Shown: in pieces, positions 40,275 to 46,858 of the stretch
Position numbering within the stretch: position 1 is the first letter of the stretch
Layout of the letters: each line of letters begins with the position of its first letter
Sequence record: MW812342.1
Strand: one strand, 5' to 3'
DNA: 64,000 bases
Notes under the pieces: generated by a model
Told to the model about the DNA's origin: nothing
Seen by the model: the letters and a program-made list of their open reading frames with translations, nothing else
Databases searched by the model: none
Program-made: the position numbers and the translations under genes

Positions 40275-40814
40275 ATGTACAATTACGTTGTATTGAATCG
40301 TAAAGGCAGCGTCATCACTTTCGTCTTTAAATCTGACCCACCTGCAAAAGCGCGGGCGTTGGATTTGGCTGGGTTCGATTATAAAGGTATCCGCAAAGGT
40401 GTGCAGTTGTCGTTCGATGGCGAAGTGCAGCCAGAGAATCTTCTGTACTCCGGTGATGTGGAACCGCGCAAACTCACCAAGATGGAAAGCAAGTCTGCTT
40501 CCAAGGCCATGCCAATCTTTGAAGTGCTGAAACGTGTTGGTACCAGCATTCAGTATCGGATCGTAGGCAGCGAGCACGGTATTGAGCTGAAGCTCGACCT
40601 TGCAGGCTATGACTACAAAAAGCTGAAGAAGGGCGTGAACTTCCAGTTCGATGGCGGGATTGTCTCTGCGGATAATCTGCGTATTGTCAACCGTGGAAAC
40701 TCAGACAAGATACCGCTGGCGAAGGTTGCCGCGCCGGTGACTAAGCAGCGCACCGCTGTGAAGTCCAAACGTGGTGCCACACCGAATGTGTCTATCCTGC
40801 GTAAGCACTTCTAA
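40275..40814 (+). CDS. protein with internal domain duplication and basic tail
   Basis: LDLAGFDYKGIRKGVQLSFDG...ENL repeated as LDLAGYDYKKLKKGVNFQFDG...DNL. Confidence 0.75.
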   Translation: MYNYVVLNRKGSVITFVFKSDPPAKARALDLAGFDYKGIRKGVQLSFDGEVQPENLLYSGDVEPRKLTKMESKSASKAMPIFEVLKRVGTSIQYRIVGSEHGIELKLDLAGYDYKKLKKGVNFQFDGGIVSADNLRIVNRGNSDKIPLAKVAAPVTKQRTAVKSKRGATPNVSILRKHF

Positions 40815-40820
40815 TCTGTA

Positions 40821-40858
40821 CGTCCTACTCCTTCGGGGGTAGGACGGTTTTATTTTTT
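40821..40858 (+). terminator. Rho-independent terminator
   Basis: CGTCCTACTCC-TTCG-GGGGTAGGACG plus T run. Confidence 0.85.
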
Positions 40859-40869
40859 AAGGACTGTCG

Positions 40870-41397
40870 ATGACTACTTTTATTGCGGGCAAGAATTTCC
40901 TCGCCGCAGACCGTGCGGTATTGAAAAACCGAATGGTGTTTGCAGACGCAAAGATTCGCGTTATCCGTGGGCGTATCGCGTACTTCTTTGGTTCGGAACA
41001 CCCCACGCCAGACGAACGCAAGTTGTTGGAGAAGCATATCTACGATTACGTCTTTGGCAAAGAAAAAGCCAAAGCCGTCGCGGAGGTGTGGTTGCTGAAC
41101 TTCATCGAAAGCAATACGCTGGTCGTAATGACACGCAAGAAGACGATGGCGTTCAGTGGTATCTCACGGCTCGCCGCTTGGTCACCTGAAATAGGTGGGC
41201 CGGTAAACCACACAGGACTGACGGTTAGTGAAGACTTGCTGGAGACGCCCGTGGTGTTCGGTTCCGGTGCGGAGTTGGCGCGTGCAGGATGGGCATGTGG
41301 GCTAACGCCTGAAAACATCATTCTCATGGTGCAGAAAATCGACCCGATGTCAGGGCATGGTTACGACGTGGTTTACAGAGAGGACTTGCGCAAATGA
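40870..41397 (+). CDS. HslV/proteasome-beta-like Ntn threonine protease
   Basis: N-terminal (M)TT nucleophile, AAD, Lys in DAKIR, VFGSGAELARA and IDPMSG motifs. Confidence 0.7.
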   Translation: MTTFIAGKNFLAADRAVLKNRMVFADAKIRVIRGRIAYFFGSEHPTPDERKLLEKHIYDYVFGKEKAKAVAEVWLLNFIESNTLVVMTRKKTMAFSGISRLAAWSPEIGGPVNHTGLTVSEDLLETPVVFGSGAELARAGWACGLTPENIILMVQKIDPMSGHGYDVVYREDLRK

Positions 41398-41960
41398 GTA
41401 CCGTTTCTATTGCTGGTTTCGTTCTGAATGGCATGGTGTACGTGAACACTACTGTACAATCCATGCACTTGTTGGCACCGTATAACCCCGAAGCTGGATT
41501 CGATAAACTCGGATGGTGGTTCCCAAACGACGGGCAGGAAAAGATTACCGAAGTTTTGGTGAGTGGTAATGACGCAGAACGCCATGAAGATGTTACCTAT
41601 TCAGGCAGTGTGTTGCGACACGATGGTCAGTTCTACGACGTCAAGTTAGCCGGGCCGAATTACCGTCTAATGTTTGTCCACCAACCTGCACCGGTGATGG
41701 TCTTTCCAGCCGACAGGGAATCGACGTTTGTGGCGACCTTTATCGAACACCTGTCAATGCACCCCGACTTGGACACCGAAGGGCCTGTATGGAGTGTTGA
41801 CCGCATCGTGAAGATACTGTCGTGCTTCGCAGGCAGCCACAATTTCAAACCGTTTATGCCGTTGGATGAACTCAAAGCCAAAGTGCATGCGATGCCTGAG
41901 TGTAAATTGGCCCCATTCCCCCGACAGAGAAAGTCGGATTACGAACGCGCAGATTTATAA
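41394..41960 (+). CDS. hypothetical protein
   Basis: 188 aa, ATGA overlap with the protease gene. Confidence 0.65.
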   Translation: MSTVSIAGFVLNGMVYVNTTVQSMHLLAPYNPEAGFDKLGWWFPNDGQEKITEVLVSGNDAERHEDVTYSGSVLRHDGQFYDVKLAGPNYRLMFVHQPAPVMVFPADRESTFVATFIEHLSMHPDLDTEGPVWSVDRIVKILSCFAGSHNFKPFMPLDELKAKVHAMPECKLAPFPRQRKSDYERADL

Positions 41961-42003
41961 CAGCACCGCCCCTTTTAATGACAATCACAAAGAGAATCAG
42001 AAC

Positions 42004-42666
42004 ATGGCAAAGCAAAAGAAAGCCCGTAACAAAAAGTATAACCCGCAACAAGCCCATGCAGAAACTGCTCGCATGGTAGTACAAAACTCACTCGCCCGCA
42101 TTTCCTTCATTGGTGCCTCTAACCGCCGCATTCAACCGTACGGTGGTCGTGGGTTCCAGTACACCGTCAGTCGGCCTGTGCGTGTTACGGTATCCGCAGC
42201 CTTAGCAGAAACGCTGTTCGAAGACCCACGTACGTGGACGGTGTGGATGGCGCACTATGCAGTGAACCCCGAGGGTAACCTCGAGGTGGAGTCCGGCGTC
42301 CTGTCGCTTGATGAGTACACCCTGACCGACTTCACAGAAAACGTGGACAAGTTGGTGGAACACATGAAGCCTGAGTCGATGGTCGGGAACTCGGATTACG
42401 TAGGTTACGCTTTCTTTGCTTCGCCAAATGAGCGTTACGATTTCACGCACGATACTACTGATGAACGTTTGATTGAAAACTTCATCGCCTCTGGCGTTCT
42501 GGAAAAGGAAAACCATCTCCCGCAGCACGTCCTGAACGTCACCAAAGAAGAACTTATCATCATGCTCATGGCAGACCATGTTAAGTTCGACACCAACATC
42601 AGTTATCACCAGCGCGGCGAAGGTGAAGATTACCGCATCGCTGACAAGCAAGTTATCGGAGAGTAA
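42004..42666 (+). CDS. hypothetical protein with basic N-terminus
   Basis: MAKQKKARNKKYNP start at 42004 (in frame with ORF track 41866). Confidence 0.7.
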   Translation: MAKQKKARNKKYNPQQAHAETARMVVQNSLARISFIGASNRRIQPYGGRGFQYTVSRPVRVTVSAALAETLFEDPRTWTVWMAHYAVNPEGNLEVESGVLSLDEYTLTDFTENVDKLVEHMKPESMVGNSDYVGYAFFASPNERYDFTHDTTDERLIENFIASGVLEKENHLPQHVLNVTKEELIIMLMADHVKFDTNISYHQRGEGEDYRIADKQVIGE

Positions 42667-42669
42667 GAA

Positions 42670-43236
42670 ATGAAGTTCTGGGAGCGTTTTTGTCGCTTGT
42701 TTAAACATGTCCCTGAGGTACAGACCGACGGTGACCGTTATACCCAAATCGTGCGTGACTACTTCAATGCAGGTAATCACAACGTCGTGGAACTCTGTGA
42801 TGCCATCGGCATGACGCCACGCTCATTGTACTTTGCGGTTAACGACGACAACGTGCGTGCAAACATTCTGCCCCGCCTCCCTGAAAAGATGCGGATGGAA
42901 TTGCGTGATGAACTGACCGCGCGTGCGTTCAGTCGTCAAGCTGTCTCGTTAATCCGTCCGAGCACCGCGAAGTACGATTTCGATAACCTTAATGAACTGA
43001 TGGCGCACGTACACGAATTGTTCGAAACGTACCGTCTCGAGCGTGGCGAGAAAGTGGACCCCTCTATCAAGGCGTACATCCACTCACTCACTCCGCGTAC
43101 GGTACGTATCGCTTTCGTCGGCAGTGGTCACGAATTCAACGTCGGTATCATTGAAGGCATCAACGTCGTTCAGCAAAACCTGCTTATGGTGAATTATGGA
43201 AAACTTAACGCCCGTGGAAATCGTCAATGTTTTTAA
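42670..43236 (+). CDS. hypothetical protein with TetR-like HTH
   Basis: VVELCDAIGMTPRSLYFAV resembles the TetR HTH signature. Confidence 0.45.
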   Translation: MKFWERFCRLFKHVPEVQTDGDRYTQIVRDYFNAGNHNVVELCDAIGMTPRSLYFAVNDDNVRANILPRLPEKMRMELRDELTARAFSRQAVSLIRPSTAKYDFDNLNELMAHVHELFETYRLERGEKVDPSIKAYIHSLTPRTVRIAFVGSGHEFNVGIIEGINVVQQNLLMVNYGKLNARGNRQCF

Positions 43237-44932
43237 CCGTTATGTCCACGGTCAAGAAATGGCGAAAAAGATGTTGGCGATTGCTCTGCGTAACCGCGTA
43301 CGGGTAGCGTTGCTGCCCCTCGGTGAACGTAATAGCGTTCGCAAACAGAATCTGTTGCTACTGGGGCCAACTGGCTGCGGTAAAACGGCGCTGATGCGCG
43401 TACTGAAAACGCAATTTGGGTTACCTGTCTTAGAGCAGGACATGACCGGCTTTTCCGAGACGGGCTATGTGGGCCGTAATCTCATCACGTTGGGTTCGGA
43501 CTTGCAGACTCTTACGCGCACGATCGCTTTGCCGGACTGGTACGTTGAGATGCGTACCGGTATGCAGCTTGAGAAAGACGAGCAGCGTTATACCCGTGAA
43601 GAACTCAAGCAGATCGAAGCAAAAGAGTACGAAGCGGAAAGTTCTGCGCGGCAAGCCGAATGGCAAGCTAAGCGTGATGCTAAAAAGCAACACGAGCAAA
43701 CCCTGAAAGATTTAGGCGTGTTCCCGGACGATGATACCTACAATCACTATCGCATGGTCTACTACATGCGTGCGTTTTTGGTGGGCTATCACGCCATGAA
43801 GAACCTGCCTTACGACGTCATTGATTTCGCTGACATTGAAATGATTCAGGGGCAGAAACTCATTGATGTCGCGAACAAAGTTGTTGGGCTTATCGAGAAG
43901 GTGGCGGGTAGACCCATCAACAGTATTGATGACCTCAATGAAGATTTGAGCGAAAACACCGAAGAGATGATGGAGAACAATCCCGCGCTGATGGGTGAGT
44001 TCATGAGTCTGGTAGGCTACAACGAAGTGTTGGAAGTTATCATGACCCTCGGTGTTCAAATGCTCAATAGCAATCCGGTGGGAGCCTGTGTCTCGTCGGC
44101 TGATTGGTACGACATTGCCCATTCCTTCGAGCAAACCGAATCAGAAGACGTGCCGCCGGGCATCGCTTGGCGTCCGATGGAACCGACGGAGTTTGCGCTC
44201 TACATCTGTGTGATGTTGGCGCGTGACCCGGAAGGTCTGAATGAGGTCTTTGAAGACTGCGAGGACTTCACCCGCTTTGCGGACGAGAAGTTGTGGAGTT
44301 ATAAAGTGCCCGAGCCCGAAATTGTGCAACCCAAAGGGAAGCGCAATGTGTTGTCGAAGAAGGATCTCGATAAGGTGGCGAACTGTAATGGTCGCGACTT
44401 CGTTGAGAACTTCGGTGTGGTGTTCTTAGATGAGTTTGACAAGCTCATTGAAACGGATACCACGGGCCGGACACACGTCTCCCGCAGCGGTGTTCAGCGA
44501 AGCTTGCTCAAGATGGTAGAAGGTGGTCTCTACGCCGGGATTGACACTACGAACATTCTGTTTGTGGCGGCCGGTTCTTTCGCAGAAGCCCCTGTGACCA
44601 AACTGATGCCGGAACTGCAAGGCCGCTTTACGTTGCGTGCGGAACTGGAGCCACTTGACAAAGAAGCGATGATTGCGATTTGTCGAATGGACAGCAGCGA
44701 GTTCCATGCGATGGTTCGTCTCCTGCGAATCGAAGGGGTGGTGGTCAATTACGACCTTGACACCTTTGAGTACATTGCAGAGAAAACTGTTGAGGCGAAC
44801 TCGGTCGATGACCTCGGTGCACGTCGCTTAGCTGCGATCGTCGAGGCGTTGTTCCAAGACGCGTTGTACGAACCCAACAAGTACACGGAGAACGGTTACG
44901 ACCTGACAGGTAAAGCCCTGAGGAAGAACTGA
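43196..44932 (+). CDS. hslU: HslU (ClpY)-like AAA+ ATPase
   Basis: LTPVEIV...GQEMAKKMLAIALRNR, Walker A GPTGCGKT, pore loop GYVG, Walker B VFLDEFDK, GVQRSLLKMVEG, LMPELQGRF, LGARRL. Confidence 0.9.
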   Translation: MENLTPVEIVNVFNRYVHGQEMAKKMLAIALRNRVRVALLPLGERNSVRKQNLLLLGPTGCGKTALMRVLKTQFGLPVLEQDMTGFSETGYVGRNLITLGSDLQTLTRTIALPDWYVEMRTGMQLEKDEQRYTREELKQIEAKEYEAESSARQAEWQAKRDAKKQHEQTLKDLGVFPDDDTYNHYRMVYYMRAFLVGYHAMKNLPYDVIDFADIEMIQGQKLIDVANKVVGLIEKVAGRPINSIDDLNEDLSENTEEMMENNPALMGEFMSLVGYNEVLEVIMTLGVQMLNSNPVGACVSSADWYDIAHSFEQTESEDVPPGIAWRPMEPTEFALYICVMLARDPEGLNEVFEDCEDFTRFADEKLWSYKVPEPEIVQPKGKRNVLSKKDLDKVANCNGRDFVENFGVVFLDEFDKLIETDTTGRTHVSRSGVQRSLLKMVEGGLYAGIDTTNILFVAAGSFAEAPVTKLMPELQGRFTLRAELEPLDKEAMIAICRMDSSEFHAMVRLLRIEGVVVNYDLDTFEYIAEKTVEANSVDDLGARRLAAIVEALFQDALYEPNKYTENGYDLTGKALRKN

Positions 44933-45129
44933 TGTTCATGCTCGTCGTGTCAATCATTGCCATCTTTCTGATTCTCAACATATTGGGTGTCTGGATTGGC
45001 AAGTTGTCTGTTCGGTATAAGTGGCCATTCTGGATGATGCTCACTGTGGCATTGTTGTTCGGCGGATTAGTCGGCAACCTCTACTACAGTAACATCATTG
45101 CCCCCCTCTATTATAATCTCGGGAGTTAA
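44932..45129 (+). CDS. small 2-TM membrane protein
   Basis: 65 aa with two hydrophobic segments; TGATG coupling to hslU. Confidence 0.7.
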   Translation: MFMLVVSIIAIFLILNILGVWIGKLSVRYKWPFWMMLTVALLFGGLVGNLYYSNIIAPLYYNLGS

Positions 45130-45132
45130 CTC

Positions 45133-45861
45133 GTGGAAGATAATCAGTACCCGCTTCGGGTAGAACGTGTACAGAAGTCTTACTCGCAAGCCGGTAAAAC
45201 AGTAAGTGAGGGAAGTATCCACGCATCAGGCCAAGTGTTGTGTCTGCCAAAGTCTGCGTTTGTGGATGGCGCAGACTGGCAACAGATTTTCCGCCGCTGG
45301 CTCAACTGTTCTGCCCGTTGTGAAACGTCACCGGTACGTCACGCCAATCACCAACACCCGGAGTCGATTTTCCGTACCTCGAAGATTCATGAGGAGAACG
45401 TCTGTGCCACGTTGTTAGGCGGTGGCATGGATGTGAATGGTGACTACGTGACACTTAACACCAACGTGGTGCCTTATGGCCCATACGGTGATAAGTTGGC
45501 GACGTATATGCGCGAGCAGAAAGAAGTGATTATCGTTCCCCGTTTCATTAAGGATAAAGACGGTAAAATCACTGGCGTGCCTGCATGGGACTTATTGCTT
45601 CCATCAGGATGGGACGTTGTCCCGTACGTGTACAATGACGTGCAGGATGAAGTCTTTGTGGGCGAGCTGGCGTACTTCATGGACAAGTGTAAGGCCAACG
45701 GGATCAGTTGGTCAATGCACTACAGCGATACGGATGACCTCTGGCATTTCGTGCTGGAGTCGTACCATTCCGTCGTCTGCTTTGAAGGCGAAAAGAAAAA
45801 GCTGTGTGATGCGTTGGAAGACGCCACAGCGTATGTTGATAGTTTAGACAACAATGGATAA
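45133..45861 (+). CDS. degenerate prohead-protease (phiKZ gp175/T4 gp21-fold) paralog with extra C-terminal domain
   Basis: RTSKIHEENVCA and VVPYGPYGDKL match the family; the catalytic FSIRS-type motif is replaced by IVPRF. Confidence 0.45.
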   Translation: MEDNQYPLRVERVQKSYSQAGKTVSEGSIHASGQVLCLPKSAFVDGADWQQIFRRWLNCSARCETSPVRHANHQHPESIFRTSKIHEENVCATLLGGGMDVNGDYVTLNTNVVPYGPYGDKLATYMREQKEVIIVPRFIKDKDGKITGVPAWDLLLPSGWDVVPYVYNDVQDEVFVGELAYFMDKCKANGISWSMHYSDTDDLWHFVLESYHSVVCFEGEKKKLCDALEDATAYVDSLDNNG

Positions 45862-46339
45862 GAACATGGAAAAGAAAACTGAACGTAATCTGATTGAAAT
45901 CACAGGCACCGGCGAAGACAACAACGGCAAGTTCTACACCGTCGTGTTGTTAGACCAGTCCAAGATGAATGCTCACGGCCGCCAGTATAACGGCGACCTC
46001 GCACATCTGGTGCGCGGTATTAAACGTATGCCGCGTTTGTTCTGTGAAGTTGATCCGTACCATGATTACCGTTTTCAGTTCCCGGCAACCGATGACCGTT
46101 CTGTGTCCGGACCGTGCACCATCGATAACCGTAACGTCTGTGCCTCAATCGAGAACATCCGTCACGATAAGATGAACCAGCGGGTATCGGCCGAGCTGCG
46201 CCCGTGGGGCCCACAGGCCGCGATGGTACGCAATCTGTTGGACGGTGCGAACCAGAACGTAACCTTCGGGATGCGTGCCTTGGCAACACCGGATGGTAAA
46301 ATCGATAAAGTCATCACATGGGATATGTTACCTGAATGA
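45854..46339 (+). CDS. degenerate prohead-protease paralog
   Basis: NAHGRQY, IDNRNVCASIENI, LRPWGPQAAMVRNLL...NVTFGMRAL; Ser position is Gly and the GExxHP His motif reads CEVDP. Confidence 0.6.
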   Translation: MDKNMEKKTERNLIEITGTGEDNNGKFYTVVLLDQSKMNAHGRQYNGDLAHLVRGIKRMPRLFCEVDPYHDYRFQFPATDDRSVSGPCTIDNRNVCASIENIRHDKMNQRVSAELRPWGPQAAMVRNLLDGANQNVTFGMRALATPDGKIDKVITWDMLPE

Positions 46340-46823: not shown

Positions 46824-46858
46824 AAAAAGGGGCACGAAAGTGTCCTTTTTTCTTTTTT
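46824..46858 (+). terminator. Rho-independent terminator
   Basis: AAAAAGGGGCAC-GAAA-GTGTCCTTTTTT. Confidence 0.75.

What the first reader, a model, noticed from the sequence alone, without database searches (positions are those of the whole stretch)
40870..44932. Phage-encoded HslV-like protease plus an HslU with a rewired substrate domain and no C-terminal docking tail
Seen: an Ntn Thr-protease (MTT, AAD, GSG, DxxSG) and, three genes downstream in what appears to be one transcription unit, a clear HslU. Its I-domain region between the GYVG pore loop and Walker B is about 300 aa, acidic and unrecognisable. It ends ...DLTGKALRKN, about 35 aa after GARRL. Known: cellular HslU activates HslV through a C-terminal EDLSRFIL-type peptide, and the I-domain selects substrates. 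Inference: a private, co-evolved ATP-dependent protease or stand-alone unfoldase with new specificity, possibly degrading host defence proteins or remodelling the phage nucleus or prohead.
Basis: partly seen in the sequence, partly recalled or inferred. Interest (0 to 1): 0.7.

Follow-up and report, generated by a model that had tools for sequence, protein, structure and literature searches.

The report
Tail-less phage HslU plus HslV-like peptidase
A jumbo phage of the fire-blight bacterium carries an intact, much-altered copy of the bacterial HslU unfolding motor and, three genes upstream, a very diverged HslV-type protease, but the motor has lost the tail that normally plugs it into the protease and is kept by related phages that have no such protease, so it probably works on its own.

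Summary
The window is Erwinia phage pEa_SNUABM_10 (Machinavirus, 239 kb). Huxley, of the same genus, is listed as chimallin-encoding.

- **40870-41397** encodes a 175-aa protein with the full proteasome/HslV catalytic set. It matches solved HslV only at profile level (E 1.7e-8).
- **43196-44932** encodes a 578-aa HslU-clade AAA+ ATPase. All motor motifs are intact. It has a 286-aa acidic, all-helical I-domain, twice the cellular size. It stops 34 residues after GARRL; most cellular HslUs run 49 and end in the docking tail.
- Both genes are under purifying selection and unbroken.

- The tail-less ATPase clade occurs in 27 sequenced phages; only 13 carry this HslV-like gene.
- One of those 27, Wellington, has no HslV-family gene anywhere in its genome.
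- The peptidase's constant companion is the overlapping next gene (41394-41960), not the ATPase.
- A second HslV paralogue lies outside the window.

Most likely the ATPase is an autonomous unfoldase and the peptidase cassette is optional. A sister phage is already annotated HslV-/HslU-like, so this is a new variant of a known kind. Substrates are unknown.

Slip: I recalled a cellular HslV sequence from memory in my reasoning; it was used nowhere.

The parts
40821..40846 (+). Terminator-like hairpin (11-bp stem, 7 G-C pairs, T-run) that closes the upstream gene and marks the start of the block
   Evidence: sequence read
40870..41397 (+). HslV-B: a 175-aa diverged HslV/proteasome-beta-type N-terminal-Thr peptidase. 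Thr2 (Thr1 after Met removal), Asp14, Lys28, Gly131-Ser132-Gly133 and Asp158-x-x-Ser161 are present. Intact.
   Evidence: phrog_1040 'peptidase HslV family' E 5e-11. Catalytic columns invariant in 21 relatives. Family profile vs solved T. brucei HslV E 1.7e-8. Foldseek top hits are HslV and 20S beta. dN/dS about 0.11.
41394..41960 (+). 188-aa protein of unknown fold. Its start overlaps the HslV-B stop by 4 nt. It is the constant companion of HslV-B (a two-gene cassette).
   Evidence: Found directly after every HslV-B homologue examined (window, pEa_SNUABM_43, Huxley, pSal-SNUABM-04, CR5, L009, L010/L011, L012). No similarity to the HslV profile or to PDB chains. dN/dS 0.08.
42004..42666 (+). 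220-aa conserved protein of unknown function. It stays syntenic with the ATPase in phages that lack the peptidase cassette.
   Evidence: phrog_6965; tblastn synteny; no PDB match
42670..43236 (+). 188-aa protein of unknown function. Its end overlaps the ATPase start by 41 nt. Homologues precede the ATPase in Caitlin and Wellington.
43196..44932 (+). HslU-clade AAA+ ATPase, 578 aa. The N-terminal AAA part is residues 1-106 (43196-43513). The I-domain is residues 107-392 (43514-44371). The C-terminal AAA part plus small domain is residues 393-578 (44372-44929). It has no C-terminal docking tail. Intact.
   Evidence: PDB HslU E 1.9e-46. Motor motifs invariant. Tail and I-domain lengths. AF2 pLDDT 86, with the top 50 PDB folds all HslU/ClpY. 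TIGR00390 196.7 bits against a cut-off of 362.45.
44932..45129 (+). 65-aa hydrophobic small ORF whose start shares one base with the ATPase stop codon. It lies in the same block.
   Evidence: homologue in pEa_SNUABM_43; no PHROG match
45133..45861 (+). 242-aa protein, first of a pair of short paralogues related to the phiKZ-type (S80) prohead protease. It lies directly after the ATPase.
   Evidence: phrog_7478 E 7.6e-18. BLASTP between the two paralogues E 1e-5.
45854..46339 (+). 161-aa protein, second paralogue of the pair. Overlaps the preceding gene by 8 nt.
   Evidence: Pfam Peptidase_S80 E 1.6e-7, profile positions 87-175 of 229. phrog_7478 E 1.3e-53.
46824..46851 (+). Next strong terminator-like hairpin (12-bp stem, T-run). 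Probable end of the block.

Best explanation
Both genes are real, intact and probably active, but they are not an obligate HslUV pair. The 43196 product is a hexameric AAA+ unfoldase descended from HslU. It keeps the ATP-binding, ATP-hydrolysis and pore-loop residues (shown). It carries a doubled, strongly acidic, all-helical I-domain in the position of the substrate-selecting I-domain of HslU (shown). That this domain gives it a different substrate set, perhaps basic proteins, is inferred. It has lost the last ~15 residues, which in cellular HslU insert between HslV protomers and switch the peptidase on (loss shown; consequence inferred from published HslUV work). The most likely mode of action is that of an autonomous unfoldase or remodeller: it pulls selected proteins through its pore and releases them, without needing a docked peptidase. 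The 40870 product is a diverged HslV-type Thr peptidase that travels as a two-gene cassette with 41394. It is an optional accessory of this phage group. It may receive substrates from the ATPase, but then by contacts other than the canonical tail. Otherwise it acts with its cassette partner on its own.
For: **Identity of the ATPase.**
- Solved HslU structures match at E 1.9e-46.
- The AF2 model has pLDDT 86 and all top 50 PDB hits are HslU/ClpY.
- Walker A, GYVG, Walker B, the Arg finger and GARR are invariant in 43 sequences.

**Tail loss is a clade feature.**
- Phage-clade sequences have 33-44 residues after GARRL, or unrelated extensions, in 20 of 20. Cellular HslUs have 49 in 21 of 23.
- The tail docks between HslV protomers and an aromatic tail residue is a key determinant of activation (PMC4106860, PMC6429459).

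**Independence from the peptidase.**
- The ATPase clade occurs in 37 records, which is 27 phages. HslV-B occurs in 19 records, which is 13 phages.
- The cassette is absent from the syntenic block in Caitlin, a Seoulvirus and Wellington.
- A whole-genome profile scan of Wellington finds no HslV-family ORF: best E 2.9, against 9e-11 for the positive control.
- Cassettes without a nearby ATPase exist in L009 and L012.
- Synonymous divergence from pEa_SNUABM_43 is 0.7-1.0 for HslV-B, 41394 and 42004. It is 0.12-0.15 for 42670 and the ATPase. The two ends of the block therefore have different recent histories.

**Both genes are in use.** dN/dS is 0.08-0.12 and neither has an internal stop.

**The peptidase looks competent.** T2, T3, D14, K28, G131, G133 and D158 are invariant in 21 relatives with 18-85 % identity to the window's protein. 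D14, K28 and the G-S-G loop align with the D, K and GSG of solved HslV.
Against: - Every one of the 13 sequenced phages with HslV-B also has the ATPase 1.8-2.9 kb downstream on the same strand. This holds across genera with only 27-50 % identity. In the window no strong terminator separates the two genes. A functional link is therefore not excluded.
- 18 of the 27 ATPase-bearing phages carry the other paralogue, HslV-A, which could be the true partner.
- The HslV-B model is poor (pLDDT 56.7).
- No expression, localisation or proteome data exist for this phage.
- The absence of HslU from the L009 and L012 genomes is known only for the ±10 kb read.
Confidence: 0.5

Rival explanations
1. A private phage HslUV-type protease. 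The ATPase hexamer docks on a ring of HslV-B (possibly with 41394 as an adaptor or cap) through contacts that replace the lost tail. It feeds unfolded substrates into the peptidase chamber.
For: 13 of 13 phages with HslV-B have the ATPase in conserved synteny. The two genes lie in one terminator-bounded block. The peptidase catalytic set is intact. The proline that precedes the HslV-contacting loop in E. coli HslU (Pro315, PMC4106860) has a counterpart in most phage-clade sequences (alignment printed). A sister phage is annotated this way.
Against: No docking tail in any clade member. The ATPase is retained without HslV-B in 14 of 27 phages, and without any HslV-family gene in Wellington. The whole neighbourhood is syntenic in these phages, so the conserved order is not specific evidence. 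The two genes have different recent histories.
Confidence: 0.25
2. The phage HslV-like peptidases (HslV-B here, HslV-A elsewhere in the genome) are switched on by the host's own HslU, which still has the tail. The phage ATPase does something unrelated.
For: HslV-A occurs in many phages that have no phage HslU at all: SPN3US, Asesino, phiEaH2 and ~49-kb Klebsiella phages. Phage HslV-family proteins therefore do work without a phage ATPase.
Against: HslV-B is so diverged that it misses the Pfam and NCBIfam models. Conservation of the tail-binding pocket was not examined. HslV-B itself is never seen in a sequenced phage without the phage ATPase.
Confidence: 0.15
3. HslV-B is an ATPase-independent, self-compartmentalised peptidase like the stand-alone HslV relatives Anbu and BPH. 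It works with its cassette partner 41394 and has no connection to any unfoldase.
For: HslV-B and 41394 overlap by 4 nt and occur together in every locus examined, including two with no ATPase nearby.
Against: The family profile hits HslV and 20S subunits in the PDB; no Anbu or BPH chain appears up to E 10. The function of 41394 is unknown.
Confidence: 0.1

Closest known systems
Bacterial HslUV (ClpYQ) protease, e.g. E. coli / H. influenzae (PDB 1g4a, 1g3i, 5ji3)
   Same: The ATPase has the same AAA+ fold, the same motif set and the same place of insertion of the I-domain. The peptidase has the same N-terminal Thr, Asp, Lys and GSG catalytic arrangement.
   Different: The I-domain is twice as long, acidic and unrelated in sequence. 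The last ~15 residues, including the docking tail, are missing. A 4-residue segment after the VEG motif is also missing. The genes are not adjacent. The peptidase misses the Pfam/NCBIfam models and the ATPase misses the hslU equivalog cut-off.
Erwinia phage RAY gp116 (Agricanvirus), the 'HslUV-like protease' shown by GFP fusion to sit in the phage nucleus (PMC10299810)
   Same: A phage HslU-like ATPase of similar length (569 aa). It is also without the cellular tail, and it is an accessory gene of a chimallin-encoding jumbo phage.
   Different: Only 31 % identical in the AAA core, less than either is to cellular HslU (~40 %). It joins the window's clade only as a long-branch sister (173 of 200 NJ bootstraps). 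No HslV-like ORF lies within ±5 kb. Its localisation cannot simply be transferred.
Eukaryotic-type HslV of Trypanosoma brucei (PDB 4hnz)
   Same: Best solved match of the HslV-B family profile (E 1.7e-8 over 146 of 164 profile positions) and best Foldseek hit.
   Different: 18 % identity in the Foldseek alignment. T. brucei HslV is activated by the tail of HslU2 (PMC4106860), which the phage ATPase lacks.
HslV-A, the second phage paralogue (pSal-SNUABM-04 ORF1; pEa_SNUABM_10 record 388-861, outside the window)
   Same: Same PHROG family (phrog_1040) and the same M-T-T start and GSG loop. hhalign probability against the HslV-B family is 96.7 %.
   Different: It is 157 aa and scores much higher on the family model: phrog_1040 E 2.5e-36, against 5.1e-11 for HslV-B. 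It is far more widespread (62 records) and is common in phages without the ATPase.
ClpX acting without ClpP as an autonomous unfoldase/remodeller (own knowledge of the family)
   Same: A working model for what a tail-less relative of a protease ATPase can do. ClpX is the second-best family match of the N-terminal AAA part.
   Different: No zinc-binding N-domain was matched. HslU scores higher than ClpX (196.7 against 125.7 bits).

Membership tests
HslU (NCBIfam TIGR00390, ATP-dependent protease ATPase subunit) | AAA+ module with Walker A, GYVG pore-1 loop, Walker B, arginine finger and sensor-2 GARR | tested here: met
   All are invariant columns in the 43-sequence alignment. They align with solved HslU.
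HslU (NCBIfam TIGR00390, ATP-dependent protease ATPase subunit) | HslU is the best-scoring family and fold | tested here: met
   TIGR00390 196.7 bits against ClpX 125.7. The Foldseek top 50 are all HslU/ClpY.
HslU (NCBIfam TIGR00390, ATP-dependent protease ATPase subunit) | Reaches the curated equivalog score | tested here: not met
   196.7 bits against a cut-off of 362.45. The cellular control P0044 scores 628.4.
HslU (NCBIfam TIGR00390, ATP-dependent protease ATPase subunit) | I-domain inserted between the pore loop and Walker B | tested here: met
   Same insertion point. The length is 311 residues against 146-197, and there is no sequence similarity.
HslU (NCBIfam TIGR00390, ATP-dependent protease ATPase subunit) | C-terminal tail that docks between HslV protomers and activates the peptidase | tested here: not met
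   The protein ends 34 residues after GARRL. Most cellular HslUs (21 of 23) run 49 and end in the conserved acidic-Ser-basic-aromatic-Ile-Leu motif. None of the 20 phage-clade sequences has it.
HslU (NCBIfam TIGR00390, ATP-dependent protease ATPase subunit) | Forms a hexamer that caps HslV and drives degradation | not testable with these tools
HslV / proteasome beta (Pfam PF00227; PHROG 1040) | Catalytic Thr directly after the initiator Met | tested here: met
   M-T-T start with an SD 6 nt upstream. T2 and T3 are invariant in 21 relatives.
HslV / proteasome beta (Pfam PF00227; PHROG 1040) | Asp17 / Lys33 / Gly-Ser-Gly / Asp-x-x-Ser equivalents | tested here: met
   D14, K28, G131, G133 and D158 are invariant. 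D, K and GSG align with those of 4hnz and 2z3a.
HslV / proteasome beta (Pfam PF00227; PHROG 1040) | Reaches curated family thresholds | tested here: not met
   No PF00227 hit and no NCBIfam hit. Only phrog_1040 at E 5e-11 and profile-level similarity to solved HslV at E 1.7e-8.
HslV / proteasome beta (Pfam PF00227; PHROG 1040) | Ntn alpha-beta-beta-alpha sandwich fold | tested here: inconclusive
   The AF2 model has pLDDT 56.7. Foldseek's best hits are HslV and 20S beta, but with TM of only 0.33.
HslV / proteasome beta (Pfam PF00227; PHROG 1040) | Encoded next to, and always together with, its hslU | tested here: inconclusive
   Three genes lie between the two. 13 of 13 HslV-B phages have the ATPase, but 14 of 27 ATPase phages lack HslV-B, and two contigs have the cassette alone.
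ClpX | Best family match over the whole protein | tested here: not met
   Only the N-terminal AAA part (residues 5-97) matches ClpX chains. The score is lower than for HslU.
Anbu / BPH (stand-alone HslV relatives) | Closer to these than to HslV by sequence | tested here: not met
   No Anbu or BPH chain is among the PDB matches of the family profile up to E 10; HslV chains lead. The comparison is by sequence only.

The most novel reading that the evidence does not exclude
The tail-less ATPase, HslV-B and the overlapping 41394 product form a three-part phage proteasome. In it the docking function of the lost HslU tail has passed to another surface or to 41394. It works in or at the phage nucleus on basic, DNA-associated proteins selected by the acidic I-domain.
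Probability: 0.12. Interest if true: 0.75.

Novelty: new variant of a known kind. Interest (0 to 1): 0.45.

Why it matters
HslUV is the textbook two-part bacterial proteasome, and its coupling through the HslU tail is well studied. This phage lineage has kept the motor for a long time, with purifying selection across genera. Over that time it discarded the coupling tail and doubled the substrate-selecting domain. If the motor works alone, that would mean an HslU descendant has been turned into something other than a protease activator. This would give a tractable natural example of how AAA+ protease motors are repurposed. It would also add a candidate player to the poorly known protein-handling biology of nucleus-forming jumbo phages. 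The practical gain now is modest. It corrects annotations: 'hypothetical' in this phage, and 'DnaA' with 'no HslU' for pSal-SNUABM-04. It also separates two HslV-like paralogues that current annotation lumps together.

Tried and rejected
- **Locus search from the wide HslV-B alignment** failed for lack of a conserved stretch. The narrow alignment found only Huxley.
- **AF2 of HslV-B with 7 sequences** gave a poor model (pLDDT 56.7). I rely on profile evidence instead.
- **Idea that 41394 is a second, inactive HslV-like subunit** was rejected: hhalign probability 0.1 % and no PDB match.
- **Idea that 41394 supplies an activating C-terminal peptide in trans.** Its C-termini are not conserved among six homologues.
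- **PDB searches for 42004 and 42670** found nothing.
- **Idea that RAY gp116 and the window's ATPase are independent acquisitions**, based on pairwise identity of 31 % against ~40 % to cellular HslU. It is not supported by the NJ tree, which joins them in 173 of 200 replicates. Long-branch attraction is possible, so I leave it open.
- **Diversifying selection on the I-domain.** omega is 0.13-0.14. That is higher than in the cores (0.03-0.08) but clearly purifying.
- **A first tree script timed out**.
- **Literature searches** found no functional study of either protein in this phage group.
- **The last wide protein search** was left unused, because the partner gene's PHROG, Pfam and PDB results made a named hit unlikely.

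Full report
**Source and setting.** The window is 100 % identical to Erwinia phage pEa_SNUABM_10 (MW812342.1, genus Machinavirus, 238,920 bp; window position = record position minus 62,000). All genes of the region are 'hypothetical protein' in that record. In the sister phage pEa_SNUABM_43 the two genes are already annotated 'putative HslV-like' and 'putative HslU-like ATP-dependent protease'. Huxley (same genus), Caitlin, CR5, SPN3US, Phobos and Wellington are listed among chimallin-encoding, nucleus-forming phages in PMC10299810.

- *Peptidase gene.* 40870-41397 is a 175-aa ORF beginning M-T-T, with AAGGA 6 nt upstream and a strong terminator-like hairpin (40821-40846) just before it.
- *ATPase gene.* 43196-44932 is a 578-aa ORF.
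- *Layout.* Three + strand genes lie between the two, with overlaps or gaps of at most 43 nt. No strong terminator-like site occurs until 46824-46851, which is compatible with a single transcription block. Sigma-70-like sites are at chance level (8 found, 7.8 expected) and say nothing for a phage with its own polymerases.

**The ATPase.**
- *Identity.* Residues 4-106 and 393-564 align with solved HslU at E 1.9e-46; ClpX is second and matches only the N-terminal part.
- *Motifs.* In an alignment of 20 phage-clade and 23 cellular sequences, the Walker A, GYVG, Walker B, arginine-finger and GARR columns are invariant.
- *Fold.* AF2 on that alignment gives pLDDT 86.0. The 50 best PDB folds are all HslU/ClpY.
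- *I-domain.* Residues 107-392 are modelled with good confidence as all-helical: two long helices (134-172 and 179-202) followed by a helical bundle. The region has pI 4.5 and net charge -26 and no Pfam match. It is the least conserved part, yet still under purifying selection (omega 0.13-0.14 against 0.03-0.08 for the cores).
- *Lengths.* Between GYVG and Walker B the phage clade has 259-426 residues (311 here). Cellular HslUs have 146-197.
- *Tail.* After GARRL, 21 of 23 cellular sequences have exactly 49 residues, and most end in the conserved docking motif. The phage clade has 33-44, or longer unrelated extensions, and never that ending. According to PMC4106860 and PMC6429459 this tail inserts between HslV protomers and activates the peptidase.
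- *Membership.* The protein scores 196.7 bits on the NCBIfam hslU equivalog, below the 362.45 cut-off; a cellular control scores 628. It is HslU-derived but not an HslU equivalog.

**The peptidase.**
- *Family models.* Single-sequence searches find no Pfam, NCBIfam or PDB match. PHROG 1040 'peptidase HslV family' matches at E 5e-11.
- *Rarity.* An exhaustive profile search of 1.8 billion representatives found only 23 proteins at E ≤ 0.001, so the family is rare.
- *Catalytic residues.* Across 21 of these (18-85 % identity to the window's protein), T2, T3, D14, K28, G131, G133 and D158 are invariant, and positions 132 and 161 are Ser or Thr in most of them. This is the Thr1/Asp17/Lys33/Gly-Ser-Gly/Asp-x-x-Ser pattern of proteasome-type peptidases (numbering from my own knowledge of the family).
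- *Solved relatives.* The family profile matches solved T. brucei HslV at E 1.7e-8, with D, K and GSG aligned. It matches bacterial HslVs at 0.002-0.1.
- *Fold.* The AF2 model is poor (pLDDT 56.7). Even so, its best Foldseek hits are HslV and 20S beta subunits. I count the fold as likely but not shown.
- *Selection.* dN/dS is about 0.11.
- *Breaks.* Neither gene has any: zero stops and zero frameshifts.

**Who travels with whom.**
- *In the phage collection.* Among 50,697 phage records, the ATPase clade (E ≤ 1e-30) is in 37 records, which is 27 distinct phages. HslV-B is in 19 records, which is 13 phages. These are the eight Machina-type phages plus Phobos, EarlPhillipIV, Derbicus, pEa_SNUABM_38 and CR5. 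Each of them has the ATPase 1.8-2.9 kb downstream.
- *Cassette absent, block retained.* In Caitlin, a Seoulvirus and Wellington the flanking genes (39556, 42004, ATPase, 46879) remain syntenic, but 40275, HslV-B and 41394 are missing.
- *Wellington genome-wide.* I fetched the whole Wellington genome and scanned all 1,643 ORFs of at least 60 aa with the family profile and with two HslV-A-type sequences. The best E was 2.9, against 9e-11 for the positive control. A tail-less ATPase of this clade is therefore kept by a phage with no HslV-family gene.
- *Cassette without the ATPase.* Metagenomic contigs L009 and L012 carry HslV-B plus the 41394 homologue with no ATPase in the DNA read. In L012 the 42004 and 46879 homologues are adjacent where the ATPase would be.
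- *The invariant link.* HslV-B and 41394 overlap by 4 nt and are together in all nine loci examined. 41394 resembles neither HslV nor any solved structure.
- *Different recent histories.* Against pEa_SNUABM_43, dS is 0.7-1.0 for HslV-B, 41394 and 42004, but 0.12-0.15 for 42670 and the ATPase. This indicates a recombination junction between the two ends of the block.

**A second paralogue.** The pSal-SNUABM-04 paper reports HslV at ORF1 and ORF116 and 'no HslU' (PMC7823757). Its HslU homologue is annotated DnaA. ORF116 is HslV-B. ORF1 (157 aa, here called HslV-A) matches the HslV-B family by hhalign at 96.7 % probability and phrog_1040 at 2.5e-36. It occurs in 62 phage records. These include pEa_SNUABM_10 at record 388-861 (outside the window), 18 of the 27 ATPase phages, and many phages without the ATPase: SPN3US, Asesino, phiEaH2 and ~49-kb Klebsiella phages. 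Phage HslV-family proteins therefore also work without a phage HslU.

**The RAY homologue.** RAY gp116 localises with phage DNA inside the nucleus (PMC10299810). It is only 31 % identical to the window's ATPase in the AAA core, and it also lacks the cellular tail. It joins the clade as a long-branch sister in 173 of 200 NJ replicates, while the seven clade members group in 200 of 200. Nuclear localisation of the window's protein is a lead, not a finding.

**Mechanism.**
- *Shown.* The ATPase is an intact HslU-derived motor with an enlarged acidic I-domain and no tail. The peptidase is an intact, rare, diverged HslV-type protein with a conserved catalytic set. The ATPase is retained without the peptidase.
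- *Inferred.* The ATPase acts as an autonomous unfoldase or remodeller with its own substrate set (confidence about 0.5). The peptidase cassette is an optional accessory.
- *Rivals.* A private protease with non-canonical docking (0.25). Activation of the phage peptidases by host HslU (0.15). An ATPase-independent peptidase with 41394 (0.1).
- *Substrates* remain unknown.

**Novelty and score.** The identification as HslV-/HslU-like is already in GenBank for a sister phage, and the RAY homologue has been localised. In the literature I searched I did not find four points: the clade-wide loss of the tail, the doubled I-domain, the HslV-B/41394 cassette, and the uncoupled distribution. I rate this a new variant of a known kind, with interest 0.45.

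Noticed in passing
Outside the window: pEa_SNUABM_10 record 388-861; L013:1-474 in pSal-SNUABM-04: A second HslV-family paralogue (HslV-A, 157 aa). It is closer to the family model than the window's gene. It is present in 62 phage records, including many that lack the HslU-like ATPase.
   Followed up: partly
window 45133-45861 and 45854-46339: Two short, mutually paralogous proteins of PHROG 7478 'head maturation protease', overlapping by 8 nt directly after the ATPase. The second hits only positions 87-175 of the 229-position Pfam Peptidase_S80 model. A homologue lies near the ATPase in Caitlin and Wellington too, and Wellington has a separate full-size head maturation protease elsewhere.
   Followed up: partly
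window 42666-42670 region (between 42004-42666 and 42670-43236): Synonymous divergence from pEa_SNUABM_43 falls from 0.7-1.0 (40870, 41394, 42004) to 0.12-0.15 (42670, 43196). This suggests a recent recombination junction inside the block.
   Followed up: no
window 40275-40814: The 179-aa product looks like an internal duplication. Both halves (residues 4-72 and 82-179) match the same ~100-aa ORF in L009 and L010, and phrog_12339 matches in two stretches. It is present only where the HslV-B cassette is present.
   Followed up: no
L014:5965-6525 (pSal-SNUABM-04 ORF121): The HslU homologue of pSal-SNUABM-04 is annotated 'putative DnaA protein', and the paper states that no HslU is encoded. Both are annotation errors.
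   Followed up: yes
window 44932-45129: A 65-aa strongly hydrophobic ORF whose start shares one base with the ATPase stop codon. It is conserved in pEa_SNUABM_43 (77 % identity) and has no PHROG match.
   Followed up: no
window 44510-44560 (ATPase residues ~440-455): The phage clade lacks four residues that cellular HslUs have directly after the conserved VEG motif (alignment printed). The structural meaning was not examined.
   Followed up: no
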